DNA from: Auanema rhodensis
Lineage: Eukaryota > Animalia > Nematoda
DNA length: 64,000 bases
Assembly: GCA_964057225.1 (NCBI GenBank)
Contig: OZ059897.1
Span: forward strand, 7,626,001-7,690,000
Direction: 5' to 3'
A program made the position numbers and the translations under genes. This document shows positions 681 through 57,972 of the stretch, one piece after another. The number at the start of each line of letters is the position of its first letter. Within the stretch, counting starts at the first letter, position 1. A model generated the notes under the pieces. That model made no database searches and was not told the origin of the DNA. It worked only from the letters and a program-made list of their open reading frames with translations.

Positions 681-771
681 AATATAGATCTTTTTGAATT
701 AAATTTAGAAGTAAATATAATATTGTATGAGTAAGTACTTCATTATTTTTATGAAATGGCGACGATATGTA

Positions 772-844
772 GCCTCGTTAGCTCAGCTGGTAGAGCGTTA
801 GACTTTTAATCTAACGGTCAGGGGTTCGAGCCCCCTACGGGGCT
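772..844 (+). tRNA. tRNA-Lys-TTT: tRNA-Lys (anticodon UUU), representative copy of the array
   Basis: 73-nt cloverleaf: GCCTCGT/ACGGGGC acceptor stem, GCTC/GAGC D stem, TTAGA-CTTTTAA-TCTAA anticodon arm, AGGGG-TTCGAGC-CCCCT T arm; A box TAGCTCAGCTGG, B box GGTTCGAGCCC; no encoded CCA, no intron. Confidence 0.97.
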
Positions 845-846
845 AA

Positions 847-851
847 TTTTT
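847..851 (+). terminator. RNA Pol III oligo-T terminator (T5 here, T6 in most units), repeated after each tRNA copy
   Basis: AATTTTT(T) begins immediately after the discriminator base in essentially every unit. Confidence 0.85.
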
Positions 852-3800
852 AACATTCTATCTGTTCCGAACATGTAAAACTTTATTTTCTTACCTTGTT
901 TAAACTTTTATTTATTCCAGAATCTTGAATTTTTCTTCAAATATAGATCTTTTTGAATTAAATTTAGAAGTAAATATACTATTGTATGAGTAGGTACTTC
1001 ATTATTTTTATGAAGTTAGGAGGATGTGTAGCCTCGTTAGCTCAGCTGGTAGAGCGTTAGACTTTTAATCTAACGGTCAGGGGTTCGAGCCCCCTACGGG
1101 GCTAATTTTTTACATTCTATCTGTCCCGAACATGTAAAACTTAATTTTCTTACCTTGTTTAAACTTTTATTTATTCCAGAATCTTGAATTTTTCTTCAAA
1201 TATAGATCTTTTTGAATTAAATTTAGAAGTAAATATACTATTGTATGAGTAGGTACTTCATTATTTTTATGAAATGGCGACGATATGTAGCCTCGTTAGC
1301 TCAGCTGGTAGAGCGTTAGACTTTTAATCTAACGGTCAGGGGTTCGAGCCCCCTACGGGGCTAATTTTTAACATTCTATCTGTTCCGAACATGTAAAACT
1401 TTATTTTCTTACCTTGTTTAAACTTTTATTTATTCCAGAATCTTGAATTTTTCTTCAAATATAGATCTTTTTGAATTAAATTTAGAAGTAAATATACTAT
1501 TGTATGAGTAGGTACTTCATTAATTTTATGAAGTTAGGAGGATGTGTAGCCTCGTTAGCTCAGCTGGTAGAGCGTTAGACTTTTAATCTAACGGTCAGGG
1601 GTTCGAGCCCCCTACGGGGCTAATTTTTTACATTCTATCTGTCCCGAACATGTAAAACTTAATTTTCTTACCTTGTTTAAACTTTTATTTATTCCAGAAT
1701 CTTGAATTTTTCTTCAAATATAGATCTTTTTGAATTAAATTTAGAAGTAAATATACTATTGTATGAGTAGGTACTTCATTATTTTTATGAAATGGCGACG
1801 ATATGTAGCCTCGTTAGCTCAGCTGGTAGAGCGTTAGACTTTTAATCTAACGGTCAGGGTTCGAGCCCCCTACGGGGCTAATTTTTTACATTCTATCTGT
1901 CCCGAACATGTAAAACTTTATTTTCTTACCTTGTTTGAACTTTCATTTATTCCAGAGTCTTGAATTTTTCTTCAAATATAGATCTTTTTGAATTAAATTT
2001 AAAAGTAAATATACTATTCTATGAGTAGGTACTTCATTAATTTTATGAAGTTAGGAGGATGTGTAGCCTCGTTAGCTCAGCTGGTAGAGCGTTAGACTTT
2101 TAATCTAACGGTCAGGGGTTCGAGCCCCCTACGGGGCTAATTTTTTACATTCTATCTGTCCCGAACATGTAAAACTTAATTTTCTTACCTTGTTTAAACT
2201 TTTATTTATTCCAGAATCTTGAATTTTTCTTCAAATATAGATCTTTTTGAATTAAATTTAGAAGTAAATATACTATTGTATGAGTAGGTACTTCATTATT
2301 TTTATGAAATGGCGACGATATGTAGCCTCGTTAGCTCAGCTGGTAGAGCGTTAGACTTTTAATCTAACGGTCAGGGGTTCGAGCCCCCTACGGGGCTAAT
2401 TTTTTACATTCTATCTGTCCCGAACATGTAAAACTTTATTTTCTTACCTTGTTTGAACTTTCATTTATTCCAGAATCTTGAATTTTTCTTCAAATATAGA
2501 TCTTTTTGAATTAAATTTAAAAGTAAATATACTATTCTATGAGTAGGTACTTCATTAATTTTATGAAGTTAGGAGGATGTGTAGCCTCGTTAGCTCAGCT
2601 GGTAGAGCGTTAGACTTTTAATCTAACGGTCAGGGGTTCGAGCCCCCTACGGGGCTAATTTTTTACATTCTATCTGTCCCGAACATGTAAAACTTAATTT
2701 TCTTACCTTGTTTAAACTTTTATTTATTCCAGAATCTTGAATTTTTCTTCAAATATAGATCTTTTTGAATTAAATTTAGAAGTAAATATACTATTCTATG
2801 AGTAAGTACTTCATTATTTTTATGAAATGGTGACGATATGTAGCCTCGTTAGCTCAGCTGGTAGAGCGTTAGACTTTTAATCTAACGGTCAGGGGTTCGA
2901 GCCCCCTACGGGGCTAATTTTTAACATTCTATCTGTCCCGAACATGTAAAACTTAATTTTCTTACCTTGTTTAAACTTTTATTTATTCCAGAATCTTGAA
3001 TTTTTCTTCAAATATAGATCTTTTTGAATTAAATTTAGAAGTAAATATACTATTGTATGAGTAAGTACTTCATTATTTTTATGAAATGGTGACGATATGT
3101 AGCCTCGTTAGCTCAGCTGGTAGAGCGTTAGACTTTTAATCTAACGGTCAGGGGTTCGAGCCCCCTACGGGGCTAATTTTTTACATTCTATCTGTCCCGA
3201 ACATGTAAAACTTAATTTTCTTACCTTGTTTAAACTTTTATTTATTCCAGAATCTTGAATTTTTCTTCAAATATAGATCTTTTTGAATTAAATTTAGAAG
3301 TAAATATACTATTGTATGAGTAGGTACTTCATTATTTTTATGAAATGGCGACGATATGTAGCCTCGTTAGCTCAGCTGGTAGAGCGTTAGACTTTTAATC
3401 TAACGGTCAGGGGTTCGAGCCCCCTACGGGGCTAATTTTTTACATTCTATCTGTCCCGAACATGTAAAACTTTATTTTCTTACCTTGTTTGAACTTTCAT
3501 TTATTCCAGAATCTTGAATTTTTCTTCAAATATAGATCTTTTTGAATTAAATTTAAAAGTAAATATACTATTCTATGAGTAGGTACTTCATTAATTTTAT
3601 GAAGTTAGGAGGATGTGTAGCCTCGTTAGCTCAGCTGGTAGAGCGTTAGACTTTTAATCTAACGGTCAGGGGTTCGAGCCCCCTACGGGGCTAATTTTTT
3701 ACATTCTATCTGTCCCGAACATGTAAAACTTAATTTTCTTACCTTGTTTAAACTTTTATTTATTCCAGAATCTTGAATTTTTCTTCAAATATAGATCTTT

Positions 3801-6800
3801 TTGAATTAAATTTAGAAGTAAATATACTATTCTATGAGTAAGTACTTCATTATTTTTATGAAATGGTGACGATATGTAGCCTCGTTAGCTCAGCTGGTAG
3901 AGCGTTAGACTTTTAATCTAACGGTCAGGGGTTCGAGCCCCCTACGGGGCTAATTTTTTACATTCTATCTGTCCCGAACATGTAAAACTTAATTTTCTTA
4001 CCTTGTTTAAACTTTTATTTATTCTAGAATCTTGAATTTTTCTTCAAATATAGATCTTTTTGAATTAAATTTAGAAGTAAATATAATATTGTATGAGTAA
4101 GTACTTCATTATTTTTATGAAATGGTGACGATATGTAGCCTCGTTAGCTCAGCTGGTAGAGCGTTAGACTTTTAATCTAACGGTCAGGGGTTCGAGCCCC
4201 CTACGGGGCTAATTTTTTACATTCTATCTGTCCCGAACATGTAAAACTTAATTTTCTTACCTTGTTTAAACTTTTATTTATTCCAGAATCTTGAATTTTT
4301 CTTCAAATATAGATCTTTTTGAATTAAATTTAGAAGTAAATATACTATTGTATGAGTAGGTACTTCATTATTTTTATGAAATGGCGACGATATGTAGCCT
4401 CGTTAGCTCAGCTGGTAGAGCGTTAGACTTTTAATCTAACGGTCAGGGGTTCGAGCCCCCTACGGGGCTAATTTTTAACATTCTATCTGTCCCGAACATG
4501 TAAAACTTAATTTTCTTACCTTGTTTAAACTTTTATTTATTCCAGAATCTTGAATTTTTCTTCAAATATAGATCTTTTTGAATTAAATTTAGAAGTAAAT
4601 ATACTATTGTATGAGTAAGTACTTCATTATTTTTATGAAATGGTGACGATATGTAGCCTCGTTAGCTCAGCTGGTAGAGCGTTAGACTTTTAATCTAACG
4701 GTCAGGGGTTCGAGCCCCCTACGGGGCTAATTTTTTACATTCTATCTGTCCCGAACATGTAAAACTTAATTTTCTTACCTTGTTTAAACTTTTATTTATT
4801 CCAGAATCTTGAATTTTTCTTCAAATATAGATCTTTTTGAATTAAATTTAGAAGTAAATATACTATTGTATGAGTAAGTACTTCATTATTTTTATGAAAT
4901 GGTGACGATATGTAGCCTCGTTAGCTCAGCTGGTAGAGCGTTAGACTTTTAATCTAACGGTCAGGGGTTCGAGCCCCCTACGGGGCTAATTTTTTACATT
5001 CTATCTGTCCCGAACATGTAAAACTTAATTTTCTTACCTTGTTTAAACTTTTATTTATTCCAGAATCTTGAATTTTTCTTCAAATATAGATCTTTTTGAA
5101 TTAAATTTAGAAGTAAATATAATATTGTATGAGTAAGTACTTCATTATTTTTATGAAATGGTGACGATATGTAGCCTCGTTAGCTCAGCTGGTAGAGCGT
5201 TAGACTTTTAATCTAACGGTCAGGGGTTCGAGCCCCCTACGGGGCTAATTTTTTACATTCTATCTGTCCCGAACATGTAAAACTTAATTTTCTTACCTTG
5301 TTTAAACTTTTATTTATTCCAGAATCTTGAATTTTTCTTCAAATATAGATCTTTTTGAATTAAATTTAGAAGTAAATATACTATTGTATGAGTAGGTACT
5401 TCATTATTTTTATGAAATGGCGACGATATGTAGCCTCGTTAGCTCAGCTGGTAGAGCGTTAGACTTTTAATCTAACGGTCAGGGGTTCGAGCCCCCTACG
5501 GGGCTAATTTTTAACATTCTATCTGTTCCGAACATGTAAAACTTCATTTTCTTACCTTGTTTAAACTTTTATTTATTCCAGAATCTTGAATTTTTCTTCA
5601 AATATAGATCTTTTTGAATTAAATTTAGAAGTAAATATACTATTGTATGAGTAGGTACTTCATTATTTTTATGAAATGGCGACGATATGTAGCCTCGTTA
5701 GCTCAGCTGGTAGAGCGTTAGACTTTTAATCTAACGGTCAGGGGTTCGAGCCCCCTACGGGGCTAATTTTTTACATTCTATCTGTCCCGAACATGTAAAA
5801 CTTAATTTTCTTACCTTGTTTAAACTTTTATTTATTCCAGAATCTTGAATTTTTCTTCAAATATAGATCTTTTTGAATTAAATTTAGAAGTAAATATACT
5901 ATTGTATGAGTAAGTACTTCATTATTTTTATGAAATGGTGACGATATGTAGCCTCGTTAGCTCAGCTGGTAGAGCGTTAGACTTTTAATCTAACGGTCAG
6001 GGGTTCGAGCCCCCTACGGGGCTAATTTTTTACATTCTATCTGTCCCGAACATGTAAAACTTAATTTTCTTACCTTGTTTAAACTTTTATTTATTCCAGA
6101 ATCTTGAATTTTTCTTCAAATATAGATCTTTTTGAATTAAATTTAGAAGTAAATATACTATTGTATGAGTAGGTACTTCATTATTTTTATGAAATGGCGA
6201 CGATATGTAGCCTCGTTAGCTCAGCTGGTAGAGCGTTAGACTTTTAATCTAACGGTCAGGGGTTCGAGCCCCCTACGGGGCTAATTTTTTACATTCTATC
6301 TGTCCCGAACATGTAAAACTTTATTTTCTTACCTTGTTTGAACTTTCATTTATTCCAGAATCTTGAATTTTTCTTCAAATATAGATCTTTTTGAATTAAA
6401 TTTAAAAGTAAATATACTATTCTATGAGTAGGTACTTCATTAATTTTATGAAGTTAGGAGGATGTGTAGCCTCGTTAGCTCAGCTGGTAGAGCGTTAGAC
6501 TTTTAATCTAACGGTCAGGGGTTCGAGCCCCCTACGGGGCTAATTTTTTACATTCTATCTGTCCCGAACATGTAAAACTTAATTTTCTTACGTTGTTTAA
6601 ACTTTTATTTATTCCAGAATCTTGAATTTTTCTTCAAATATAGATCTTTTTGAATTAAATTTAGAAGTAAATATACTATTCTATGAGTAAGTACTTCATT
6701 ATTTTTATGAAATGGTGACGATATGTAGCCTCGTTAGCTCAGCTGGTAGAGCGTTAGACTTTTAATCTAACGGTCAGGGGTTCGAGCCCCCTACGGGGCT

Positions 6801-9800
6801 AATTTTTTACATTCTATCTGTCCCGAACATGTAAAACTTAATTTTCTTACCTTGTTTAAACTTTTATTTATTCCAGAATCTTGAATTTTTCTTCAAATAT
6901 AGATCTTTTTGAATTAAATTTAGAAGTAAATATAATATTGTATGAGTAAGTACTTCATTATTTTTATGAAATGGTGACGATATGTAGCCTCGTTAGCTCA
7001 GCTGGTAGAGCGTTAGACTTTTAATCTAACGGTCAGGGGTTCGAGCCCCCTACGGGGCTAATTTTTTACATTCTATCTGTCCCGAACATGTAAAACTTAA
7101 TTTTCTTACCTTGTTTAAACTTTTATTTATTCCAGAATCTTGAATTTTTCTTCAAATATAGATCTTTTTGAATTAAATTTAGAATTAAATATACTATTGT
7201 ATGAGTAGGTACTTCATTATTTTTATGAAATGGCGACGATATGTAGCCTCGTTAGCTCAGCTGGTAGAGCGTTAGACTTTTAATCTAACGGTGAGGGGTT
7301 CGAGCCCCCTACGGGGCTAATTTTTAACATTCTATCTGTTCCGAACATGTAAAACTTAATTTTCTTACCTTGTTTAAACTTTTATTTATTCCAGAATCTT
7401 GAATTTTTCTTCAAATATAGATCTTTTTGAATTAAATTTAGAAGTAAATATACTATTGTATGAGTAGGTACTTCATTATTTTTATGAAATGGCGACGATA
7501 TGTAGCCTCGTTAGCTCAGCTGGTAGAGCGTTAGACTTTTAATCTAACGGTCAGGGTTCGAGCCCCCTACGGGGCTAATTTTTTACATTCTATCTGTCCC
7601 GAACATGTAAAACTTTATTTTCTTACCTTGTTTGAACTTTCATTTATTCCAGAATCTTGAATTTTTCTTCAAATATAGATCTTTTTGAATTAAATTTAAA
7701 AGTAAATATACTATTCTATGAGTAGGTACTTCATTAATTTTATGAAGTTAGGAGGATGTGTAGCCTCGTTAGCTCAGCTGGTAGAGCGTTAGACTTTTAA
7801 TCTAACGGTCAGGGGTTCGAGCCCCCTACGGGGCTAATTTTTTACATTCTATCTGTCCCGAACATGTAAAACTTAATTTTCTTACCTTGTTTAAACTTTT
7901 ATTTATTCCAGAATCTTGAATTTTTCTCCAAATATAGATCTTTTTGAATTAAATTTAGAAGTAAATATACTATTCTATGAGTAAGTACTTCATTATTTTT
8001 ATGAAATGGTGACGATGTGTAGCCTCGTTAGCTCAGCTGGTAGAGCGTTAGACTTTTAATCTAACGGTCAGGGGTTCGAGCCCCCTACGGGGCTAATTTT
8101 TTACATTCTATCTGTCCCGAACATGTAAAACTTAATTTTCTTACCTTGTTTAAACTTTTATTTATTCCAGAATCTTGAATTTTTCTTCAAATATAGATCT
8201 TTTTGAATTAAATTTAGAAGTAAATATACTATTGTATGAGTAGGTACTTCATTAATTTTATGAAGTTAGGAGGATGTGTAGCCTCGTTAGCTCAGCTGGT
8301 AGAGCGTTAGACTTTTAATCTAACGGTCAGGGGTTCGAGCCCCCTACGGGGCTAATTTTTTACATTCTATCTGTCCCGAGCATGTAAAACTTAATTTTCT
8401 TACCTTGTTTAAACTTTTATTTATTCCAGAATCTTGAATTTTTCTTCAAATTTAGATCTTTTTGAATTAAATTTAGAAGTAAATATACTATTGTATGAGT
8501 AGGTACTTCATTATTTTTATGAAATGGCGACGATATGTAGCCTCGTTAGCTCAGCTGGTAGAGCGTTAGACTTTTAATCTAACGGTCAGGGGTTCGAGCC
8601 CCCTACGGGGCTAATTTTTTACATTCTATCTGTCCCGAGCATGTAAAACTTAATTTTCTTACCTTGTTTAAACTTTTATTTATTCCAGAATCTTGAATTT
8701 TTCTTCAAATATAGATCTTTTTGAATTAAATTCAGAAGTAAATATAGTATTGTATGAGTAGGTACTTCATTAATTTTATGAAGTTAGGAGGATGTGTAGC
8801 CTCGTTAGCTCAGCTGGTAGAGCGTTAGACTTTTAATCTAACGGTCAGGGGTTCGAGCCCCCTACGGGGCTAATTTTTTACATTCTATCTGTCCCGAACA
8901 TGTAGAACTTAATTTTCTTAGCTTGTTTAAACTTTCATTTATTCCAGAATCTTGAATTTTTCTTCAAATATAGATGTTTTTGAATTAAATTTAGAAGTGA
9001 ATATACTATTGTATGAGTAGGTACTTCATTATTTTTATGAAATGGCACGTTCCGTTATGCTCTCACGTCGATCCTATAGACCAATAAAGCCTACAAGATG
9101 AGTGTGATAGTATTCCAGATGTAGCGGTAGATAAAGAGCATAATGGATAAACATAAGACTCGAGAAAGAAAGGTTTATTATGTCTACATGATTACAATAA
9201 GTTATATAAGTCTACATAAAGATATAAAGTGAAAGAGAGCTAAGAAAGGAAGACCAACCATCCATAGTCATTCAATAAGGCAAAGCTGAAGTCTGTGTTC
9301 CATATGAAGGGCGTGTCGTCCTCTCTCAGCCTCATGTCGTCTGATTCTAACCCGCCTGCTACGTATTGATTTCCGAATGGAACGTGCCATTTTTTCGAGT
9401 TTATGTCGCGTCCCCGCGAATAGCAAAATATGTGGCTTGTTTCAATCGTAGCAGAAGGTTTAGTTTTAAAAATAAAAATTACAATGTTAACATAAAAATA
9501 GTAAAGATAAATTACAATATAATGTTAAACAATAGTATCTGAAAAGAATTCAATAAAAATTATTTGAAAATACATGAATATTAAGTAATAAAACAATCTT
9601 TTAGAATACCAGGGCTATATTTTGTCAGCGAGAGTGCGCAAAATAGCTTTTTAGGCACGACGCTGCATGTCTAACTTGTTTGAGTATAGAGAAACGAGAG
9701 TCATGCTATATTATCGATGGAGCTAGCATGTTTCCTCAGCGTATTCAAAGCGAATTGTAATAATAAAAAAATGAAAATAAATTAAATCCCATATAATTTC

Positions 9801-10032
9801 CAAAATTGAATCATTAACTACTTGATAAGGACTGTTGCTCAGATGAATATGCAATATAATGTCTCTTATCTTTCATTTCTTCTTTATTTACGGGAAATTA
9901 TTTGAAATTGATGTTTTTTTTTTTTTTTTGAAAAATTGAAGTATTATAATCATATATGCTTTGAAACTGAAGTGCTTTTTGATTATTAGCTTACATCTCG
10001 TCTTACTCAAGTTTTTCAATGATATAATAATA

Positions 10033-10347
10033 TTAATAGCTCTGGTTTTTTAAAAGAGAGTTGATACAAAGTTTTACAATAATTTTATCAATCTCGAAAT
10101 TATTTCTTTCATCGTCTTCTTCTTGGTGGTAGCCAATTTGGTCCGATGGGTCTTCTGGTTCTGTTTCTTCAGTAGAGTCATAGTTATCGTTACCATTTAT
10201 GACTTTTATGATCTCAATATCGCTGTCGTCGTCCGTGTCATAAGTCGTTGTATTTGATCGCAAAAGTTTGAGATTGTCTTTGTGTACGTTTTGAATTTTT
10301 CCAAATGGATTCTTGAGTTGTACCATGTTTCCTTCAACGTTGTTGAC
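10033..10347 (-). pseudogene. Integrase C-terminal tail of element A with acidic extension
   Basis: VNNVEGNMVQLKNPFGKIQNVHKDNLKLL matches the Gypsy integrase post-GPY/F 'VH.D.LK' segment and aligns with element B's VVVQTDKGKSRRVHKDFVKPY. Confidence 0.7.
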
Positions 10348-10686
10348 TTCTTAGCAGTAACTGGTGTTTGTTCTTCCATTGTGATGGATGTTTCTTCTCC
10401 TCCTGGTGGTACGTAATCCTCGTCGCTTAATCGTTCAGTAGGTGAATAAGTGCCTGCACGAGGAGTAAAGAATTTGTCGGTTTTGTGCTCGGCTTTCTGC
10501 TCGTCTTCGATTATAGCGATGCTCTGCGCGCGAGCTCGGCTTCTGGTGAGTGGAGCTGAGTCTCGCAGATCAAAATCAGTTCGTGTACTGAGAGGTACAG
10601 CTGATCGGAATCGCTTATCCACTTTGGTAGTGCTCTTGGTTTGGAAAAACCTTGAGTGTTTAGTAACGTGGGGGATTTTGAGACGT
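10347..10686 (-). pseudogene. N-terminal gag-like fragment of element A
   Basis: Open frame RLKIPHVTKHSRFFQTKSTTKVDKRFRSAVP...EEQTPVTAKK in the gag position; partly shared with copy 2 at 35935-36105; no diagnostic domain visible. Confidence 0.55.
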
Positions 10687-12010
10687 TAATGAGTGTTATG
10701 GATAAGGAGTTTTGGAAAAGGAATGAGAAAGCTGTGAGTAACTGGTTTGTATAGTCGGCGTTAAGGAATGAATCTAAGTTGTGGCCATCAACAGAGATCC
10801 GCCTAAATTTGGACTTTGTTCGCTCTCCAATTTAATATTCTTAAATGTATATAATTCAACCAGTTTGTATATGTTCAAAAATGTTCAGTGCTCACTTGAT
10901 TGATGCCTGAGCAATCTCATTAGTCCTTATTCCCATTTTTTTTTCTTTTTCTGACAATTCTGATCTTCTTGGACTCACGAGTGATCGAAAATGCCACGAA
11001 AATGGACTTTGGTAAATGTTCAAAGGATTTTAGCGGTTTTCATAATGTACATTCGTAATAGCATTACTCTTTTAAGGAAGCAATTTGGAAAACGAATGAG
11101 TACCGTAGTCCCATCATGATCAGAAATCTAATTTTAAAATTATGGCTAGGAATAGATGACTAAAGATTACAATAACTATATTTAAAGAATTATGGTGTTT
11201 AGGAATGAGTCTTATGCTTCAAAACAACAATAACGGTATGAGGAAGGTGACATATAGTAAGGGGAGAAAATCCAAACTGATATGCTTAAGCCAACACGAC
11301 CTGATAGACAATCACTAATAATAATTCAGTTCGTAAAATTGTACAGGATTTTTCGGACTATAGCGATCTTAAAATTCACTTTTCATAATATTCCTCCCAT
11401 TTAGGTGAGGTTTCCCGTGTAAATTCAATGCGTTATCAAATTATTTTTGGATGTTAATGGCAAAAAGTTGTCTGAACAGAAATGTAACGCAAAATAAAAT
11501 AGTCCTGATCGCAAAATATGAAATAATCTCAATTTGGTGCGCAAAATTGTTTCATCCACAAAAAACAAAGAAATAACCGTGGCTATTCTTTCCTCGAAGC
11601 CAAAATCAATCCTTAAAAGAAGAAAGTGTGGGCATAAATCTCAAAAAAAAATTATCCTTGGGTGAATTTGTTCACTAATTCATCCTAGGGTCCTCAAAAA
11701 TGCTTCGAGTTCGGGTAACAGAGTATTCGATGTTAACAGCAAGGATATAAAAATTGTTGGGTTCAGACAGACAGAAAATTGTGAACAAACGGGAAAACGT
11801 AACTTCAGTTTCAAAAAATATAAAATATCCATCTCCAAAAGGAGTGGTCCTTGCATCTGTTCCCTTTTAAACGTTGTTGGCCCCACCGTATTGTGTTAAG
11901 ACATGGAGTAGATGGTTTAGAGATATAAGAGAATTCAGATTCAATGAATTGTATTGAAAATAAAGAAATATAAGAGAAAATAGTCAAGAAATCAAGATAA
12001 AAATGTTCGA

Positions 12011-12023
12011 GGTGGAACCTCCA
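12011..12023 (-). promoter_or_regulatory. Primer binding site complementary to the tRNA-Gln 3' end (element A)
   Basis: Minus strand reads TGGAGGTTCCACC directly after the LTR; animal tRNA-Gln ends GGTGGAACCT-CCA. Confidence 0.85.
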
Positions 12024-15000
12024 CGTTCCGTTATGCTCTCACGTCGATCCTATAGACCAATAAAGCCTACAAGATGAGTGTGATAGTATTCCAGATGTAG
12101 CGGTAGATAAAGAGCATAATGGATAAACATAAGACTCGAGAAAGAAAGGTTTATTATGTCTACATGATTACAATAAGTTATATAAGTCTACATAAAGATA
12201 TAAAGTGAAAGAGAGCTAAGAAAGGAAGACCAACCATCCATAGTCATTCCATAAGGCAAAGCTGAAGTCTGTGTTCCATATGAAGGGCGTGTCGTCCTCT
12301 CTCAGCCTCATGTCGTCTGATTCTAACCCGCCTGCTACGTATTGATTTCCGAATGGAACGGGCAACGATATGTAGCCTCGTTAGCTCAGCTGGTAGAGCG
12401 TTAGACTTTTAATCTAACGGTCAGGGGTTCGAGCCCCCTACGGGGCTAATTTTTAACATTCTATCTGTTCCGAACATGTAAAACTTTATTTTCTTACCTT
12501 GTTTAAACTTTTATTCATTCCAGAATCTTGAATTTTTCTTCAAATATAGATCTTTTTGAATTAAATTTAGAAGTAAATATACTATTGTATGAGTAGGTAC
12601 TTCATTAATTTTATGAAGTTAGGAGGATGTGTAGCCTCGTTAGCTCAGCTGGTAGAGCGTTAGACTTTTAATCTAACGGTCAGGGGTTCGAGCCCCCTAC
12701 GGGGCTAATTTTTTACATTCTATCTGTCCCGAACATGTAAAACTTAATTTTCTTACCTTGTTTAAACTTTTATTCATTCCAGAATCTTGAATTTTTCTTC
12801 AAATATAGATCTTTTTGAATTAAATTTAGAAGTAAATATACTATTGTATGAGTAGGTACTTCATTAATTTTATGAAGTTAGGAGGATGTGTAGCCTCGTT
12901 AGCTCAGCTGGTAGAGCGTTAGACTTTTAATCTAACGGTCAGGGGTTCGAGCCCCCTACGGGGCTAATTTTTTACATTCTATCTGTCCCGAACATGTAAA
13001 ACTTTATTTTCTCACCTTGTTTGAACTTTTATTTATTCCAGAATCTTGAATTTTTTTTCAAATATAGATCTTTTTGAATTAAATTTAAAAGTAAATATAC
13101 TATTCTATGAGTAGGTACTTCATTAATTTTATGAAGTTAGGAGGATGTGTAGCCTCGTTAGCTCAGCTGGTAGAGCGTTAGACTTTTAATCTAACGGTCA
13201 GGGGTTCGAGCCCCCTACGGGGCTAATTTTTTACATTCTATCTGTCCCGAACATGTAAAACTTAATTTTCTTACCTTGTTTAAACTTTTATTCATTCCAG
13301 AATCTTGAATTTTTTTTCAAATATAGATCTTTTTGAATTAAATTTAAAAGTAAATATACTATTCTATGAGTAGGTACTTCATTAATTTTATGAAGTTAGG
13401 AGGATGTGTAGCCTCGTTAGCTCAGCTGGTAGAGCGTTAGACTTTTAATCTAACGGTCAGGGGTTCGAGCCCCCTACGGGGCTAATTTTTTACATTCTAT
13501 CTGTCCCGAACATGTAAAACTTAATTTTCTTACCTTGTTTAAACTTTTATTTATTCCAGAATCTTGAATTTTTCTTCAAATATAGATCTTTTTGAATTAA
13601 ATTTAGAAGTAAATATACTATTGTATGAGTAAGTACTTCATTATTTTTATGAAATGGTGACGATATGTAGCCTCGTTAGCTCAGCTGGTAGAGCGTTAGA
13701 CTTTTAATCTAACGGTCAGGGGTTCGAGCCCCCTACGGGGCTAATTTTTTACATTCTATCTGTCCCGAACATGTAAAACTTAATTTTCTTACCTTGTTTA
13801 AACTTTTATTTATTCCAGAATCTTGAATTTTTCTTCAAATATAGATCTTTTTGAATTAAATTTAGAAGTAAATATACTATTGTATGAGTAGGTACTTCAT
13901 TATTTTTATGAAATGGCGACGATATGTAGCCTCGTTAGCTCAGCTGGTAGAGCGTTAGACTTTTAATCTAACGGTCAGGGGTTCGAGCCCCCTACGGGGC
14001 TAATTTTTTACATTCTATCTGTCCCGAACATGTAAAACTTAATTTTCTTACCTTGTTTAAACTTTTATTTATTCCAGAATCTTGAATTTTTCTTCAAATA
14101 TAGATCTTTTTGAATTAAATTTAGAAGTAAATATACTATTGTATGAGTAGGTACTTCATTATTTTTATGAAATGGCGACGATATGTAGCCTCGTTAGCTC
14201 AGCTGGTAGAGCGTTAGACTTTTAATCTAACGGTCAGGGGTTCGAGCCCCCTACGGGGCTAATTTTTTACATTCTATCTGTCCCGAACATGTAAAACTTT
14301 ATTTTCTTACCTTGTTTGAACTTTCATTTATTCCAGAATCTTGAATTTTTCTTCAAATATAGATCTTTTTGAATTAAATTTAAAAGTAAATATACTATTC
14401 TATGAGTAGGTACTTCATTAATTTTATGAAGTTAGGAGGATGTGTAGCCTCGTTAGCTCAGCTGGTAGAGCGTTAGACTTTTAATCTAACGGTCAGGGGT
14501 TCGAGCCCCCTACGGGGCTAATTTTTTACATTCTATCTGTCCCGAACATGTAAAACTTAATTTTCTTACCTTGTTTAAACTTTTATTTATTCCAGAATCT
14601 TGAATTTTTCTTCAAATATAGATCTTTTTGAATTAAATTTAGAAGTAAATATACTATTCTATGAGTAAGTACTTCATTATTTTTATGAAATGGTGACGAT
14701 ATGTAGCCTCGTTAGCTCAGCTGGTAGAGCGTTAGACTTTTAATCTAACGGTCAGGGGTTCGAGCCCCCTACGGGGCTAATTTTTTACATTCTATCTGTC
14801 CCGAACATGTAAAACTTAATTTTCTTACCTTGTTTAAACTTTTATTTATTCCAGAATCTTGAATTTTTCTTCAAATATAGATCTTTTTGAATTAAATTTA
14901 GAAGTAAATATAATATTGTATGAGTAAGTACTTCATTATTTTTATGAAATGGCGACGATATGTAGCCTCGTTAGCTCAGCTGGTAGAGCGTTAGACTTTT

Positions 15001-38358: not shown

Positions 38359-38841
38359 TCAATCACGTTTCACGAGCAATTGGGATGTAGGTGATTGACT
38401 ACGAGAAAAATATGAAACCACGTAGGAAAGTGCAGTAAATTTCAATAGGACGTAAAATGAGATGACTACACAGAAAAATATGACAATCTTGGAATTATAT
38501 AGAGAAACAAAATTATAAATCGAATGTAAAGATGAAGAAAGATTATCAAAAATGTTGTCGTTATCTAAGTTAAGTGCAGAAGAGTATTGAGAAAGAACGG
38601 ACGAATATGAATGAAAACGTGGTAAATTGAGAGTTCCTTTGAGTGGTAAGGGATGAGTGTGAAACGAGCAGGTACCAATACACATGATGTCGACCGTAGG
38701 TGTTAGTGCGTGATATGTTAGTGTTGTGTTTGATCCAAGGGTAGTGCAGGGGACTGAAAAGGAACAATCAGGACATTGAATGTCTGCATTAGTGGGTTTG
38801 TCGGATTTGCAATATACACTGTGGTGCAAAATATTGTAACC
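38359..38841 (-). pseudogene. env: C-terminal part of the Gc-like envelope (domain III, stem, TM anchor, tail)
   Basis: Cys-spaced beta-rich segment ending LKGTL, then hydrophobic IVIFFCVVISFYVLL; lies collinear on the other side of the transposase. Confidence 0.8.
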
Positions 38842-39039
38842 TCTTTATTTTAACTTTTTTTTTCAAAGGACGTTTTGTTCCAAATCTTTTTGTATTGTTT
38901 AGAAGCTCTTAAATTTACAAACATTTTATTATTAAGAGGAAAATTAATTAACAATATGGATGTGAGAAAAAGTGAAAATATTTTTTTTACAACTTTTGGG
39001 CAAAAATAAACTTAAACAAAAAATTAAAAAAAAAAAATT

Positions 39040-40080: not shown

Positions 40081-40154
40081 TACTCAGGTAAAGCCTGAAT
40101 AAATTTCAAGAATTAGCAAAAATATTCAAAAAATTAAGTTGAAAGCAAAAAAAA

Positions 40155-43628: not shown

Positions 43629-43695
43629 GAGTTGCGAGAAACGAAATAGGATTAATTGGGAGTACTGATGAATGATGGGATTATTAGGATCTAAA

Positions 43696-45414
43696 TTATG
43701 TAAGAATAGAATCCAATTTTTTAATTTTGGTTTTCCTTATGATGAATATTAGAATAAATGTGACGATTTTGGTAAGTTGAAAAAAAGACTTGATAGAAGA
43801 GAGGTTAGAAAGAGGAGAACTAGAAAGATTTAAATTATTATTGGGTATGTCCGTGGCAACGAATGCGTTGTCGGACGGAAGAAAGGGAAAAATATCATTA
43901 TTGATATTTTCGCTCAGGTATGTGCAATGAAACCAGTGTTCTTGCGGTAATGCCTGAGGTAAGCAACCCCGACTCAAAAGATCAGCGGGATTGTTAAGAG
44001 TTGGAATATAGTGAAAAATGGCTTTATTAAATTCGTCTCGTATCTTTTGTACTCTATTGCGTACAAATATGGTTTTATCGGAGTCAGAGGTGATCCATTG
44101 CAGAACTCATATATTATCACACCAAATGTGAGTGGGTATGGATCGCTCTAGCCCGAGAGACCGTCTTACGAATTTTGCCATTGTTATAGCTGTAAAAACC
44201 TCTTGTAATTCCAATTGAGGAATTGTTAATTTTTTAGAGGAAGGAGATAATTTACTTTTGGAAAAAATTAAATGAGTGTTAAATTTTTTAGGACCCACCG
44301 AATTATTCATTTCTTCTGATACATATTGTATGTATACCGCCACTCCGTATGCCTTTGCGCTAGCATCGGTGCATATATGGAGTATTGGTGTATGACTGTT
44401 GAACCCATGATCAAGTTTTCTTGGTATACTGATAGAAAAGTTCGATTTGGTGAGTTTGTTCAGTGAAGAAATAAATTTATCTGGGAGAGGTTCATCCCAT
44501 TTGGGTTTATCGGACCATGCTTCTTGTACAAGCATTTTATAAGGAACTACGATAGGTGCGATTAAACCTAAAGGGTCGTAGAATTTGGCCGATGTTTTTA
44601 ATAGCTCCCTACGGGTTATGGAAGTTACTGTTGATTCTTTCCATGCGAAATTAATAGTATCGCTGTTAAAATCCCATTCAAGACCTAGTACTGAAACAGG
44701 GGAATGAGTTTTAACAAATTTGGAGTTAAAAGAATCTAGGTTTGTAACAAAATCCCTTAAATTCATATTAATATCAGCAAACATTCGCCGAGATTCTTGG
44801 TATTTAGATTCTGCGTCTGGATAATCAGTAATGGGTAGCATTACATTATCGACATACAGATTTTTCAAAATGTCTTGGCTTAATGAATTATGCTGTTGTT
44901 CTAAGTGATGTAGTATAGTTACGGCTAATAAAAAAGGACTTGGTTTTACGCCCAAAGGTACTACTCTGAACCTGTAGACAATAAGATTATCAATATCAGG
45001 TTTTTTATTGATATCTTTTACCCATAAAAATCTACAAACATCTCTGTCTTGTTCTTGCAATAATACTTGATGGAACGCTTTTTCTATATCAGCGAGCATT
45101 ACAAAGCGAGGCATGCGAAACCGTAGTAGTATGCTACATAGGTCTGGTAACATGACTGGTCCCCGTAATAAATGATCGTTCAAACTATACGATCCATTCA
45201 TTTTTGCAGAAGCGTCGTAAACTACCCGCATTTTAGTACCGGATGTAGTACTTTTAAAGACTGGATGATGAGGGAGATAATGACATAGTTGGTCGGGAAT
45301 TTTAAAAAACGGATTTACTCTTACTTCTTCAATGATACCTGAAGCAACTTGTTCTGAGAACATGTTGTGGTATTGCATTAAATTCTCTTTATTCTGAGAG
45401 AGAGTTTTATACAT
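43696..45414 (-). pseudogene. pol: BEL reverse transcriptase / RNase H
   Basis: YLPHHPV, RVVYDAS, ADIEKAF, LYVDNV, CTDASAKAYG, NPADLLSRG; in-frame TGA at 44107-44109 and a frameshift near 43700-43720. Confidence 0.92.
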
Positions 45415-45428
45415 ATGTTTTAATCTTC

Positions 45429-45998
45429 CTAGACAAAGACCAAAATTAGTAGGCAGTGGATCTTGATGTTTTCCATAGCTTCTGACATTTCAGTTGCGGG
45501 TACTGCCGTTTCCTTGTTTTGGTGATCAAGACATAACGAAGAATGATGCTTTTTTGAGCAGTGTTTGCAGCTATAGGAGCTGTTACATTCTTTTGTTAAA
45601 TGTCCTGGTCTCAAACAGTTGAGGCATAAATTTTTTGTACGGGCAGCTGATATTTTGCTATGAGTTGTAGCGAAAGAATCGCATAAAAAAGTTTTGTGCG
45701 CTTTGGAACATAATAAACAAGATTGTCCCGTAATTTTAAAATTGGAAAATTGATTTAACAGTTTTTTATTAGAATGATTAATTGGATTTTTATGGAATTT
45801 TTTATTCCTTATTGGAGAGGAAGAAGAGCGGTGATTATGAAATTTTGAATAAGATGATGAATGAGAAGTTGGTACCCCGATTGGTGAGGGTGATAAAACC
45901 ATTGTGCTGGTTGTGTTCATGTTGTTCAAAACTTGCATTAATTTTTTCAGAACCTCACCAGCACAAAGTACTTTGCTACCGGATGTAGCACAAGTCAC
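45429..45998 (-). pseudogene. gag: BEL gag C-terminal fragment with three Cys/His knuckles
   Basis: CLLCSKAHKTFLC, CLNCLRPGHLTKEC, CKHCSKKHHSSLC; the protease region is missing between this and RT. Confidence 0.88.
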
Positions 45999-46002
45999 TA
46001 CA

Positions 46003-47988
46003 ATACTATTGTATGAGGAAGTACTTCATTATTTTTATGAAATGGTGCCGATATGTAGCCTCGTTAGCTCAGCTGGTAGAGCGTTAGACTTTTAATCTAA
46101 CGGTCACGGGTTCGAGCCCCTTACGGGGCTAATTTTTTACATTCTATCTGTCCCGAAAATGTAAAACTTAATTTTCTTACCTTGTTTGAACTTTTATTTA
46201 TTCCAGAATCTTGAATTTTTCTTCAAATATACATCTTCTTGTATTAAATTTAGAAGTAAATATACTATTCTATGAGGAAGTACTTCAATAATTTTATGAA
46301 ATAGTGCCGATATGTAGCCTCGTTAGCTCAGCTGGTAGAGCGTTAGACTTTTAATCTAACGGTCAGGGGTTCGAGCCCCCTACGGGGCTAATTTTTTACA
46401 TTCTATCTGTCTCGAATATGTAAAACTTAATTTTCTTAGCTTGTTTAAAATTTTATTTATTCCAGAATCTTGAATTTTTCTTCAAATATACATCTTTTTG
46501 AATCAAAATTAGAAGTAAATATACTATTCTATGAGGAAGTACTTCAATAATTTTATGAAATAGTGCCGATATGTAGCCTCGTTAGCTCAGCTGGTAGAGC
46601 GTTAGACTTTTAATCTAACGGTCAGGGGTTCGACCCCCCTACGGAGCTAATTTTTTACATTCTAACTATCTCGAACATGTAAAACTTAATTTTCTTACCT
46701 AGTTTGAACTTTTATTTATTCCAGAATCTTGAATTTTTCTTCAAATATACATCTTCTTGTATTAAATTTAGAAGTAAATATACTATTCTATGAGTAGGTA
46801 CTTCAATAATTTTATGAAGTTAGGAGGATGTGTAGCCTCATTAGCTCAGCTGGTAGAGCGTTAGACTTTTAATCTAACGGTCAGGGATTCGAGCCTCCTA
46901 CGGGGCTAATTTTTTACATTCTATCTGTCCCGAACATGTAGAATTTAATTTTCTTAGCTTGTTTGAACTTTTATTTATTCCAGAATCTTGAATTTTTCTT
47001 CAAATATACATCTTCTTGTATTAAATTTAGAAGTAAATATACTATTCTATGAGGAAGTACTTCAATAATTTTATGAAATAGTGCCGATATGTAGCCTCGT
47101 TAGCTCAGCTGGTAGAGCGTTAGACTTTTAATCTAACGGTCAGGGGTTCGAGCCCCCTACGGGGCTAATTTTTTACATTCTATCTGTCCCGAACATGTAA
47201 AACTTAATTTTCTTAGCTTGTTTAAAATTTTATTTATTCCAGAATCTTGAATTTTTCTTCAAATATACATCTTTTTGAATCAAAATTAGAAGTAAATATA
47301 CTATTCTATGAGTAGGTACTTCAATAATTTTATGAAGTTAGGAGGATGTGTAGCCTCATTAGCTCAGCTGGTAGAGCGTTAGACTTTTAATCTAACGGTC
47401 AGGGATTCGAGCCTCCTACGGGGCTAATTTTTTACATTCTATCTGTCCCGAACATGTAGAATTTAATTTTCTTAGCTTGTTTGAACTTTTATTTATTCCA
47501 GAATCTTGAATTTTTCTTCAAATATACATCTTCTTGTATTAAATTTAGAAGTAAATATACTATTCTATGAGGAAGTACTTCAATAATTTTATGAAATAGT
47601 GCCGATATGTAGCCTCGTTAGCTCAGCTGGTAGAGCGTTAGACTTTTAATCTAACGGTCAGGGGTTCGAGCCCCCTACGGGGCTAATTTTTTACATTCTA
47701 TCTGTCCCGAACATGTAAAACTTAATTTTCTTAGCTTGTTTAAAATTTTATTTATTCCAGAATCTTGAATTTTTCTTCAAATATACATCTTTTTGAATCA
47801 AAATTAGAAGTAAATATACTATTCTATGAGGAAGTACTTCAATAATGTTATGAAATAGTGGCGATATGTAGCCTCGTTAGCTCAGCTGGTAGAGCGTTAG
47901 ACTTTTAATCTAACGGTCAGGGGTTCGAGCCCCCTACGGGGCTAATTTTTTACATTCTATCTGTCCCGAACATGTAAAACTTAATTTT
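46003..47988 (+). repeat. tRNA-Lys(UUU) array, block 4 (8 genes)
   Basis: Starts 46058...47871; copies at 46058, 46576, 46835 and 47353 have stem substitutions. Confidence 0.92.
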
Positions 47989-48076: not shown

Positions 48077-48784
48077 AATACTGTGACGATAATTGCATTA
48101 ATCATCATGTTATGAAGGAAATACATATCGAAGGTTAATTCGATGAAAACGATCATTATCACCCAAAGGGAATGGGCGGTTCACGCCAGCAGTGCAAAAG
48201 CAGGTCAACCTGTGAGAAGGAGCTAGCAAACCAGATTCTACCTCAGGTCTCGAAAATCGGTTAACATTATTGTGAACCAAATGAACACATATCGAAGGTT
48301 AATTCGATAAGAACGTTTATTCTTCGCCAACGGCCAAAGAAGTTGAACAAAGAATACTTAGACACGTCTTCTCACGATAGTATAGTTCCTTTTAGTCTTT
48401 TTAATTTTAAAAACATAAATATTCATTTATTAAGCATAAATCAAATACATATGATATTCCGTAATTATTGTAATATTTGTTTTTTTCTTTTCAGAGTTTG
48501 ATCCTAATTGTTTTTTTTTATCTGTGTTGTGGTTATGTTCTTTCGATGATTACAAATAACTTTCAAATAACAATTCAATATTGAAGATGATTAAAGAGAA
48601 GGAAATATCTATAGAGAATCAAAAGTGACAGTCAAAATTAGAAACAATTCCATATTGATTCTCAAAACAACATGCATAGTGATTGATAGGTAGATGTTTT
48701 ATCAGTATAAACAGAATATACTTTGAACAATCGACAGCGCATAAAAGGAAAATTCTTCAAGGGCTTGAGCGTCAGTTCTCCCTT

Positions 48785-56410: not shown

Positions 56411-56436
56411 AAAAAATTAGGTTGAAACTATAATAG

Positions 56437-56664
56437 GCTTACGGTAAATGGGCGGAGTCAGATTGCTGGCCAGGATTTGAAAAACTTCTTCTCATTTACC
56501 CTCCGCATCGCTCAGCGAAGCACACCTGTTCTTTTGCTCCTGAATCTCTCTCTCTCCCTCACACACATCTAAATGAATCTTACGCACCTTTCGTAAACAT
56601 CCCACACGTAGCTCAGCATTCTCAGTTTTTCCAAACCAAGAGTCCTACAAAGGTTGCCAAAAGA
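56437..56664 (+). mobile_element. Fragment of the leader / gag start of a relative of family A
   Basis: Translates ...VNIPHVAQHSQFFQTKSPTKVAKR versus LKIPHVTKHSRFFQTKSTTKVDKR in element A; second copy from ~63805 to the window end. Confidence 0.7.
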
Positions 56665-56689
56665 ATATATTTTTTATATTTTTTATTTT

Positions 56690-57972
56690 TTTATTTATTT
56701 ATTCCAGAATCTTGAATTTTTCTTCAAATATACACCTTTTTGAATTAAATTTAGAAGTAAGTATACTATTCTATGAGAAAGTACTTCATTATTTTTATGA
56801 AATGGTCGCAATATGTAGCCTCGTTAGCTCAGCTGGTAGAGCGTTAGACTTTTAATCTAACGGTCAGGGGTTCGAGCCCCCTACGGGGCTAATTTTTTAC
56901 ATTCTATCTGTCCCGAACATGTAAAACTTAATTTTCTTACCTTGTTTGAACTTTTATTTATTCCAGAATCTTGAATTTTTCTTCAAATATACATCTTCTT
57001 GTATTAAATTTAGAAGTAAATATACTATTCTATGAGTAGATACTTCAATAATTTTATGAAGTTAGGAGGATGTGTAGCCTCATTAGCTCAGCTGGTAGAG
57101 CGTTAGACTTTTAATCTAACGGTCAGGGGTTCGAGCCTCCTACGGGGCTAATTTTTTACATTCTATCTGTCCCGAACATGTAGAATTTAATTTTCTTAGC
57201 TTGTTTGAACTTTTATTTATTCCAGAATCTTGAATTTTTCTTCAAATATACATCTTCTTGTATTAAATTTAGAAGTAAATATACTATTCTATGAGGAAGT
57301 ACTTCAATAATTTTATGAAATAGTGCCGATATGTAGCCTCGTTAGCTCAGCTGGTAGAGCGTTAGACTTTTAATCTAACGGTCAGGGGTTCGAGCCCCCT
57401 ACGGGGCTAATTTTTTACATTCTATCTGTCTCGAATATGTAAAACTTAATTTTCTTAGCTTGTTTAAAATTTTATTTATTCCAGAATCTTGAATTTTTCT
57501 TCAAATATACATCTTTTTGAATCAAAATTAGAAGTAAATATACTATTCTATGAGGAAGTACTTCAATAATTTTATGAAATAGTGCCGATATGTAGCCTCG
57601 TTAGCTCAGCTGGTAGAGCGTTAGACTTTTAATCTAACGGTCAGGGATTCGAGCCTCCTACGGGGCTAATTTTTTATATTCTATCTGTCCCGAACATGTA
57701 GAATTTAATTTTCTTAGCTTGTTTGAACTTTTATTTATTCCAGAATCTTGAATTTTTCTTCAAATATACATCTTTTTGAATCAAATTTAGAAGTAAATAT
57801 ACTATTCTATGAGAAAGTACTTCATTATTTTTATGAAGTTATGAGCATGTGTAGCCTCGTTAGCTCAGCTGGTAGAGCGTTAGACTTTTAATCTAACGGT
57901 CAGGGGTTCGAGCCCCCTACGGGGCTAGTTTTTTACATTCTATCTGTCCCGAACATGTAAAACTGAATTTTT
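56690..57972 (+). repeat. tRNA-Lys(UUU) array, block 5 (5 genes)
   Basis: Starts 56818, 57077, 57336, 57595, 57854. Confidence 0.92.

What the first reader, a model, noticed from the sequence alone, without database searches (positions are those of the whole stretch)
681..57972. Satellite-like mega-array of about 123 tRNA-Lys(UUU) genes
A single isoacceptor gene with intact A box, B box and terminator is repeated every 259 bp over roughly half the window. The 73-nt gene is almost invariant in blocks 1-2 while the spacers carry many SNPs, which suggests selection on the tRNA or on its TFIIIC sites. Tandem tRNA arrays are known (for example in Entamoeba), but one cluster of this size is far beyond typical nematode per-isoacceptor copy numbers. 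Inferred possible roles: dosage for AAA codons in an AT-rich genome, or a structural Pol III/TFIIIC chromatin domain.
Basis: partly seen in the sequence, partly recalled or inferred. Interest (0 to 1): 0.8.

Follow-up and report, generated by a model that had tools for sequence, protein, structure and literature searches.

The report
Tandem array of lysine tRNA genes
The window really holds 123 head-to-tail copies of one intact lysine tRNA gene whose RNA-coding part is kept unchanged while the spacers drift, but it is one of many such arrays in this nematode genome, and a 2026 preprint on what is probably this species already reported them in outline.

Summary
Observation confirmed. There are 123 tRNA-Lys(UUU) genes, all on the + strand, in a 259-bp unit. 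They form six blocks separated by LTR-element and transposon insertions and by a U2-like/1944-bp repeat module. 104 genes are identical. All 123 keep a T5-T7 terminator, and the common gene has consensus A and B boxes.

The gene is under constraint. It shows 20 mutational events where 45 are expected from spacer rates (p=2e-5). No gene variant occurs in 5 or more units, against 39 of 115 spacer variants. The three array strata have no consensus differences in the gene, against 12-13 in the spacer.

Diversity peaks at -16..-5, and -25..-17 is invariant. This is the published profile of germline-transcribed tRNA genes.

The AAA-codon dosage idea is not specifically supported. The probable species, Auanema rhodense, has 19,554 tRNA genes, and scan notes report arrays for many isoacceptors, Lys(CTT) included. 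The preprint places several such arrays in DNA discarded from body cells.

Not shown here: species identity, elimination status of this array, copy number by read depth, and expression. Only assembled contigs were available.

The scan has found the same kind of array before on other DNA of this genome. Verdict: real and well preserved, not new in kind.

The parts
681..9046 (+). Array block 1: 32 tRNA-Lys(UUU) units of 259 bp, plus a partial unit cut at -12 by an LTR insertion
772..844 (+). Example gene: the 73-nt form shared by 104 copies. A box 779-790, B box 823-833, T5 terminator 847-851, invariant T/A-rich element 747-755 (-25..-17), hypervariable leader 756-767 (-16..-5)
9047..12364 (+). 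Interruption 1: non-autonomous LTR element ('family A') with about 340-bp LTRs. If the LTR termini are read as CG..CG, a 4-bp target duplication GGCA lies at -14..-11 of the gene at 12375
   Evidence: no Pfam domain in its ORF
12365..20555 (+). Array block 2: 32 units, same stratum as block 1 (96% mean identity between the two blocks)
20556..27518 (+). Array blocks 3a and 3b: 13 + 13 units. Each opens with a 115-bp partial-unit duplication that leaves a 3'-half tRNA fragment (20556-20590, 24038-24072). 20140-23725 and 23622-27207 are identical over 3586 bp
27519..30216 (+). Interruption 2: a second, unrelated non-autonomous LTR element in the spacer, about 80 nt downstream of a gene, with target duplication GAAT
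30217..35507 (+). Array block 4: 20 units. The next gene is cut after its fifth base by a family-A LTR
35508..46002 (.). Interruption 3 (composite): family-A LTR; a 1993-bp element with perfect 690-bp inverted arms (36103-38095); Tc3-like transposase remnants (39040-40080, -); Bel/Pao retroelement with a phlebovirus-G2-like env (40155-45414, -)
46003..47988 (+). Array block 5: 8 more diverged units (about 91% mean identity within the block)
48167..48346 (-). U2-like snRNA gene next to block 5. It lacks the 10 nt that hold the GUAGUA branch-point box
56694..57971 (+). Array block 6: 5 units. It ends at the same junction as block 5, as part of a segmental duplication with a 9983-bp offset (tRNA block, U2-like gene, 164-bp satellite, 1944-bp repeat)
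58150..58329 (-). Second U2-like snRNA gene next to block 6

Best explanation
This is a genuine tandem array of intact, Pol III-type cytosolic tRNA-Lys(UUU) genes. It is part of a larger Lys(UUU) cluster and of a genome-wide system of tRNA-gene satellites in a nematode that is probably Auanema rhodense.

Shown: the array grew by duplication of single units and of runs of 4-12 units, and it was later split by transposon insertions.

Shown in the younger stratum only: the exchanges that shuffle units break preferentially in or just after the invariant gene.

Inferred: new mutations arise in the gene about as often as in the spacer but do not spread, and the gene consensus has not changed while the spacers diverged. 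This implies purifying selection on the tRNA itself.

Inferred: the units have been transcribed by Pol III in the germline. The diversity profile has a peak at -16..-5, an invariant T/A-rich element at -25..-17 where TBP/TFIIIB would sit, and a quiet gene body. That is the transcription-associated-mutagenesis profile published for active tRNA genes.

Untested: the most likely role is extra tRNA supply in the germline or early embryo.
For: Structure and signals: (123 genes, standard cloverleaf, A and B boxes, terminator in every unit).

Constraint: 20 events in the gene against 45 expected from the spacer's GC- and AT-site rates, Poisson p=2e-5. Nucleotide diversity is 0.0078 in the gene against 0.02-0.32 in spacer segments. 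0 of 19 gene variants reach 5 or more units, against 39 of 115 spacer variants, p=0.0017. Singleton density is similar, 11/73 against 45/186, p=0.13. Consensus differences between the three strata are 0/73 in the gene and 12-13/186 in the spacer, p=0.02 for each pair.

Transcription signature: -16..-5 has 12 events in 12 sites and the highest haplotype diversity of the unit, and -25..-17 has none (p about 0.02 and 0.01). Thornlow et al. 2018 (PMC6130373) put the peak at 12-15 nt upstream, with a dip where TBP binds about 25 nt upstream, in active genes only.

Exchange in the gene: in stratum 1, sites +113, +133 and +140 show r2 of 0.62, 0.39 and 0.35 with the leader type of the next gene, but 0.05, 0 and 0 with the leader of their own gene at a similar distance.

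Reality of the array: the order of unit variants is non-periodic, transposon insertions carry target duplications, and the unit is present in 15 runs from 4 studies.

Context: 19,554 tRNA genes, with tRNA, 5S and U2 arrays among germline-restricted repeats in A. rhodense, against about 500 tRNA loci in the older 60-Mb assembly.
Against: There are no expression data. The runs guessed to be RNA gave only four contigs, one of which spans gene and spacer alike and could be DNA carry-over.

With several hundred copies, selection on any single copy must be very weak, so selection has to act on the array as a whole or against harmful variants.

The -16..-5 peak is dominated by two old leader types, so it reflects few independent lineages. 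The tests on small windows give only p=0.01-0.02.

The linkage break at the gene is seen in one stratum only.

If exchange starts in the gene, faster homogenisation there could lower gene diversity without selection. In that case only the between-strata test (p=0.02) argues for selection.

Clustered tRNA genes in Arabidopsis stay intact although they are silenced in most tissues (PMC7544208, PMC12308677).
Confidence: 0.68

Rival explanations
1. This is a silent tRNA-gene satellite. The 259-bp unit spreads like any satellite by unequal exchange, and the tRNA gene is a passenger. The gene looks conserved because exchange and conversion start in it and homogenise it faster, or because it is repeatedly corrected from dispersed master copies. 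The array is heterochromatic and makes no useful tRNA.
For: The array behaves like satellite DNA, with duplicated runs of units, a perfect 3.6-kb duplicate, and transposon colonisation. Linkage breaks at the gene. Singleton density in the gene is not significantly below that of the spacer. Dispersed tRNA-Lys copies with other flanks exist (loose ends). Scan notes, unchecked, describe other arrays of this genome decaying into gene-less satellite. Arabidopsis clusters are silenced.
Against: Faster homogenisation does not lower the long-term substitution rate, yet the gene consensus is identical in three strata whose spacers differ at 12-13 sites. The anticodon arm, which is not a promoter element, is completely invariant. 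All 123 terminators are intact. The 5' flank profile matches that of transcribed genes.
Confidence: 0.2
2. The array has a structural or chromatin role. It serves as a dense field of TFIIIC/TFIIIB binding sites, for example as a boundary, for nuclear positioning, for chromosome pairing, or as a mark linked to DNA elimination. It does not serve as a tRNA source.
For: A and B boxes are present in every unit. The array sits in a transposon-rich repeat region next to other Pol III/snRNA-type repeats. A human tRNA tandem repeat has been proposed as a boundary element (PMC4041453).
Against: The B box is no better conserved than the rest of the gene (4 of 11 positions hit), while the anticodon arm is invariant. 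Nothing in the sequence requires this reading. No break-site-like palindrome and no telomere repeat occur in the window.
Confidence: 0.07
3. The copy number is inflated by the assembly: a much shorter array was over-expanded or falsely duplicated.
For: One 3586-bp stretch is repeated with no difference at all. Depth could not be measured.
Against: The unit variants come in a non-periodic order. Three strata differ in sequence. Three independent transposon insertions have target duplications. Thousands of distinct short contigs of the unit occur in an independent run (8063 laid from X1). Scan notes, unchecked, report about 149 and about 108 further copies on either side of the window.
Confidence: 0.05

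Closest known systems
Tandem tRNA, 5S and U2 arrays in the germline genome of Auanema rhodense (bioRxiv 10.64898/2026.08.27.747507)
   Same: This is probably the same thing. That genome has 19,554 tRNA genes, of which only 215 are called pseudogenes. It has tandem blocks of tRNA, 5S and U2 loci among repeats that are eliminated from somatic cells. The window likewise has a tRNA array beside U2-like genes, satellites and transposons.
   Different: The preprint mentions the arrays only in outline (its tables are not readable here). It gives no unit structure, no gene-versus-spacer analysis and no expression data. I could not prove that the window is from this species, or that this array lies in eliminated DNA.
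Entamoeba tRNA gene arrays (PMC2652664)
   Same: Head-to-tail arrays of intact tRNA genes make up a sizeable share of the genome.
   Different: Entamoeba units hold up to five different tRNA genes with microsatellite-like spacers, and they contain almost all tRNA genes of the organism. Here there is one gene per unit, and a separate dispersed set of tRNA genes seems to exist.
Arabidopsis clustered tRNA genes: Pro, Ser/Tyr and Cys clusters (PMC7544208, PMC12308677, PMC10701932)
   Same: Tandemly repeated, sequence-intact tRNA genes in repeat-rich chromatin, in addition to a dispersed set. The question of silencing versus tissue-specific use is the same.
   Different: Those clusters have tens of units rather than hundreds, in a plant genome regulated by DNA methylation. 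No link to programmed DNA elimination.
Xenopus oocyte-type 5S rRNA genes and the 3.18-kb tRNA gene repeat (from my own knowledge, not checked here)
   Same: Very large tandem families of Pol III genes used to provision the oocyte. This is the functional model for the most novel reading.
   Different: In Xenopus the extra genes stay in somatic DNA and are repressed there, rather than possibly being removed. The tRNA repeat holds eight different genes.
Transcription-associated mutagenesis at active tRNA genes (PMC6130373; nematodes: PMC13010820)
   Same: The gene body is conserved, variability peaks 12-15 nt upstream, and there is a dip near -25.
   Different: The published profile comes from comparing many dispersed loci or populations. 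Here it is seen among paralogous units of one array, and the 3' inner flank is not elevated.

Membership tests
Functional eukaryotic cytosolic tRNA gene (Pol III type 2 promoter) | Cloverleaf with standard pairs and canonical loop sizes, anticodon UUU | tested here: met
   Rfam RF00005 at 69.7 bits with no non-standard pair. ARAGORN calls Lys(ttt) for all 123.
Functional eukaryotic cytosolic tRNA gene (Pol III type 2 promoter) | Internal A box (positions 8-19) and B box (positions 52-62) | tested here: met
   Read directly at 779-790 and 823-833. Unchanged in the 104 identical copies.
Functional eukaryotic cytosolic tRNA gene (Pol III type 2 promoter) | Oligo-T terminator shortly after the gene | tested here: met
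   A T5-T7 run starts 2-3 nt after the gene in all 123 units.
Functional eukaryotic cytosolic tRNA gene (Pol III type 2 promoter) | Transcribed, processed and aminoacylated | not testable with these tools
   Only contig-level runs were offered, and no run is on record as RNA. The only evidence is indirect: the mutation profile.
Tandem tRNA-gene array (tDNA satellite) | Head-to-tail units of constant length, one orientation, many copies | tested here: met
   259-bp spacing in 111 of 122 intervals, all genes on the + strand.
Tandem tRNA-gene array (tDNA satellite) | Growth by unequal exchange or segmental duplication rather than retroposition | tested here: met
   Runs of 4-12 units are duplicated, and there is a 3586-bp perfect duplicate. 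Units have no poly-A tails and no target duplications.
tRNA-derived SINE | Dispersed copies with a tRNA-like head, an unrelated body, an A-rich or simple-repeat tail, and target-site duplications | tested here: not met
   Units abut one another in register, the tRNA is complete with its own terminator, and there is no tail or duplication.
Germline-restricted (eliminated) DNA of Auanema rhodense | Lies on the discarded side of a break site, or has lower depth in somatic than in germline DNA | not testable with these tools
   No depth data. No break-site-like palindrome or telomere repeat in the window, which says nothing either way. Context only.
Genome of Auanema rhodense | Sequence identity to the published assembly | not testable with these tools
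   Organism names of the runs are coded. The assignment rests on scan notes and on the match of features to the preprint.

The most novel reading that the evidence does not exclude
This could be a germline-only tRNA factory. The array, like the other tRNA-gene satellites of this genome, would lie in DNA that is thrown away from body cells at about the 12-cell stage. It would be transcribed by Pol III in the gonad to stock oocytes and early embryos with tRNA, and purifying selection would keep it intact for that reason. The worm would thus solve the oocyte-provisioning problem by carrying thousands of extra Pol III genes that only the germline keeps. A further twist would be that active Pol III genes themselves trigger the exchanges that amplify them, which would fit the break in linkage at the gene.
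Probability: 0.3. Interest if true: 0.8.

Novelty: new member of a known kind. Interest (0 to 1): 0.4.

Why it matters
Tandem tRNA-gene arrays are known, and this genome's arrays have been reported in outline, so the array itself is not a discovery. What this window adds is a clean internal test. Within one array, the gene and its terminator are protected, and the immediate 5' flank carries the mark of germline transcription. That argues the thousands of extra tRNA genes in this worm are not simply dead satellite.

If the arrays sit in DNA that body cells discard, a direct question follows: does programmed DNA elimination separate a germline tRNA supply from a somatic one? The two leader types offer natural tags for detecting array-derived precursors.

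Tried and rejected
- Read depth and copy number: the single run search returned 15 runs, all held as assembled contigs with coded organism names. The single read-laying run therefore shows presence only, not depth, strand or expression.
- Species identification through an exact-protein look-up of the 1157-aa retroelement ORF: not on record.
- A first fuzzy-regex script timed out.
- Regular higher-order repeat: rejected. Identity does not peak at any lag, except for the 13-unit duplicate in block 3.
- tRNA-derived SINE: rejected. There is no tail, no target duplication, and the units abut in register.
- TFIIIC-site-only constraint: rejected as the main cause, because the B box varies while the anticodon arm does not.
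- Break-site palindrome (pattern taken from a scan note) and telomere repeat: none in the window.
- Other RNA families in 47950-64000 at a permissive threshold: nothing beyond the tRNA and U2 matches.
- The preprint's supplementary tables are not held as text.
Full report
OBSERVATION

ARAGORN reports 123 tRNA-Lys(ttt) genes, all on the + strand, between 771 and 57927. Rfam's tRNA model matches all 123.
- 104 copies share one 73-nt sequence that scores 69.7 bits, with every stem pair standard.
- 18 variants score 53-66 bits, and one (32913-32984) is badly damaged at 36.6 bits.
- Spacing is 259 bp in 111 of 122 intervals.
- Tandem Repeats Finder gives the same blocks: 681-9046, 12365-20556, 20556-24037, 24038-35486, 46003-47988 and 56694-57971.
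- The A box (779-790), B box (823-833) and terminator can be read directly.
- Every one of the 123 units has a run of five to seven T starting 2-3 nt after the gene.

ANATOMY

Pairwise identity of units defines three strata:
- blocks 1+2: 96-97% identity within the stratum;
- blocks 3+4: about 95%;
- the short blocks 5+6: about 90%.

There is no regular higher-order repeat. Instead, runs of 4-12 units recur elsewhere in the array. One stretch of 3586 bp (20140-23725) is repeated without a single difference at 23622-27207. The border of blocks 2 and 3, and the matching point of the duplicate, carry a 115-bp partial-unit duplication that leaves a 3'-half tRNA fragment.

The blocks are separated by insertions.
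- Interruption 1 (9047-12364) is a 3.3-kb non-autonomous LTR element. If its LTR termini are read as CG..CG, a 4-bp target duplication lies at -14..-11 of the next gene.
- Interruption 2 (27519-30216) is a different LTR element, in the spacer.
- Interruption 3 (35508 to about 46002) is a composite. It begins with a family-A LTR placed after the fifth base of a gene. It also holds Tc3-like transposase remnants and a Bel/Pao retroelement with a phlebovirus-G2-like envelope domain.
- The window's first 680 bases end in a similar LTR terminus that abuts the first unit, so the array probably continues upstream.

Blocks 5 and 6 each end at the same junction next to a U2-like gene. They belong to a segmental duplication with a 9983-bp offset that also holds a 164-bp satellite and a 1944-bp repeat.

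IS THE GENE CONSTRAINED?

I aligned all units in register and masked stretches that run into insertions.

Events within the array. Counting distinct minor alleles per column gives a lower bound on mutational events that is not inflated by duplication of units.
- The gene has 20 events in 73 sites, and the spacer 94 in 186.
- In the spacer, G/C sites change more often than A/T sites (33/43 against 61/143). The G+C-rich gene should therefore have more events, not fewer. Expected is 45 and observed is 20, Poisson p=2e-5.
- Nucleotide diversity is 0.0078 in the gene, against 0.02-0.32 in spacer segments.

Frequency of variants.
- Singletons are about as dense in the gene as in the spacer (11/73 against 45/186, p=0.13).
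- No gene variant occurs in five or more units, whereas 39 of 115 spacer variants do (p=0.0017).

Differences between strata. The three strata have identical gene consensus, but their spacer consensus differs at 12-13 of 186 sites (p=0.02 for each pair).

Pattern inside the gene. The anticodon arm has no variant at all, while the B box is hit at four of eleven positions. The constraint therefore looks like constraint on the tRNA, not only on the TFIIIC site.

A SIGNATURE OF TRANSCRIPTION

Along the unit, the most diverse 12-nt window is -16..-5. It has 12 events in 12 sites, nucleotide diversity 0.32, and the highest haplotype diversity of the unit. The nine bases at -25..-17 (a T/A-rich element) have no variant in 114 clean units (p about 0.02 and 0.01 against the spacer rate).

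Two leader types differ at six or more positions in -16..-5. They coexist at roughly equal frequency in all six blocks, and each has further sub-variants.

Thornlow et al. 2018 describe this same shape for active but not inactive tRNA genes: a conserved gene, a variability peak 12-15 nt upstream, a dip where TBP binds about 25 nt upstream, and a 5' flank more variable than the 3' flank. They ascribe it to transcription-associated mutagenesis in the germline (PMC6130373). It has been confirmed in Caenorhabditis (PMC13010820).

I read this as indirect evidence that the units are, or were, transcribed in the germline. The caveats are that the peak rests on few old lineages and that the p-values are modest.

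Two in-window insertions of the family-A LTR element lie within -14..+5 of a tRNA 5' end. Loose ends in other runs place similar LTR termini at -1/-2 and -4. This fits integration aimed at the Pol III start region, but that is another finding's subject, and the loose ends shown are a selected subset.

WHERE EXCHANGE HAPPENS

In stratum 1, the sites at +113, +133 and +140 are linked to the leader type of the next gene (r2 of 0.62, 0.39 and 0.35). They are not linked to the leader of their own gene at a similar distance (0.05, 0 and 0). Haplotype blocks are therefore centred on the spacer and break in the interval -5..+81, which is the gene plus a few bases.

The gene may be the preferred exchange site because it is the longest perfectly identical tract. 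It may also be a fragile site: from my own knowledge, active tRNA genes pause replication forks in yeast. Stratum 2 shows no linkage either way, so this rests on one stratum.

The finding also opens a rival reading. Faster homogenisation in the gene would lower diversity without selection. Only the between-strata comparison argues against that.

CONTEXT AND SPECIES

Scan notes, which are AI-written and which I did not check, state three things:
- the same 259-bp Lys(UUU) array continues with about 149 copies before and about 108 copies after this window;
- Lys(CTT) arrays lie 1.7-1.9 Mb further along;
- the genome holds arrays for Phe, Val, Arg, Ala, Trp, Pro, Asp and Gly.

Other agents took the genome for Auanema rhodense on the basis of break-site palindromes.

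The 2026 preprint on that species reports a 180.9-Mb germline assembly with 19,554 tRNA genes, of which 215 are pseudogenes. It reports elimination of nearly two thirds of the genome from somatic cells. It also reports 'arrays of 5S rRNA, several tRNA loci and U2 loci' among the germline-restricted tandem repeats. The earlier 60-Mb assembly had nearly 500 tRNA loci (PMC6469403).

The window's mix of a tRNA array, U2-like genes, satellites and transposons fits this picture. I could not prove the species, because run organisms are coded. I could not prove that this array is eliminated either. The window has no break-site-like palindrome and no telomere repeat, which decides nothing.

The unit occurs in 15 runs from 4 studies under three organism labels, so it is not peculiar to one assembly.

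VERDICT

The array is real, and the gene is protected. The simplest reading is a working Pol III gene array that evolves like a satellite.

The AAA-codon idea does not explain a genome-wide, many-isoacceptor phenomenon. The structural idea remains untested.

Tandem tRNA arrays are a known kind (Entamoeba, Arabidopsis, a human repeat), and this genome's arrays were noted in the preprint, so novelty is low. The scan has already reported sister arrays on other DNA of this genome.

The open and interesting question is whether these arrays form a germline-only tRNA supply.

The Bel/Pao provirus was only described.

Noticed in passing
window 48167-48346 (-) and 58150-58329 (-): Two U2-like snRNA genes pass Rfam's threshold (68.7 and 72.1 bits). 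In the one alignment printed (58150-58329), the 10 nt that hold the GUAGUA branch-point recognition box are missing. The other copy matches over the same length, so these are probably a U2 variant or pseudogene.
   Followed up: partly
window 49500-56400 and 61381-64000: A 1944-bp tandem repeat, with at least 4 and at least 2 copies at 97-100% identity. Each unit carries, inverted, the first 64 nt of the U2-like gene plus about 170 bp of its upstream region (48283-48519 against 50945-51181 and others). Another first-reader note suspects a spliced Cys-rich gene fragment here.
   Followed up: no
window 48783-49316 and 60008-61189: A 164-bp satellite (3 and 7 copies) lies between the U2-like gene and the 1944-bp repeat, with inverted copies nearby.
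   Followed up: no
window 9047-12364 and 35508-35700; loose ends at 767, 2841: Family-A LTR termini lie at -14..-11 and at +5 of tRNA genes in the window. In contigs of other runs they lie at -4 and -1/-2 in the opposite orientation. This suggests integration aimed at the tRNA 5' end or Pol III start site.
   Followed up: partly
window 36103-38095: A 1993-bp element with two 690-bp arms that are 100% complementary, 613 nt apart. It may be a foldback or long-terminal-inverted-repeat transposon and looks very young.
   Followed up: no
window 40155-45414 (-): A Bel/Pao-type retroelement with reverse transcriptase, Pao peptidase and integrase zinc domain. One 1157-aa ORF ends in a phlebovirus-G2-like fusion glycoprotein domain (E=5e-58). 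It is described only.
   Followed up: partly
window 20140-23725 and 23622-27207: A 3586-bp stretch of the array is repeated with zero differences. This is either a very recent duplication or a local assembly duplication.
   Followed up: partly
window 20556-20590 and 24038-24072: 3'-half tRNA fragments (positions 39-73, with a B box but no A box), created by a 115-bp partial-unit duplication.
   Followed up: yes
window 2599-2669 (contigs of runs X6, X9, X12): Contigs match the tRNA gene but continue into unrelated flanks, some with their own T-run. This indicates dispersed tRNA-Lys(UUU) genes elsewhere in the genome. One, carrying G46U, has the highest depth among the contigs laid from the run guessed to be RNA.
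   Followed up: no
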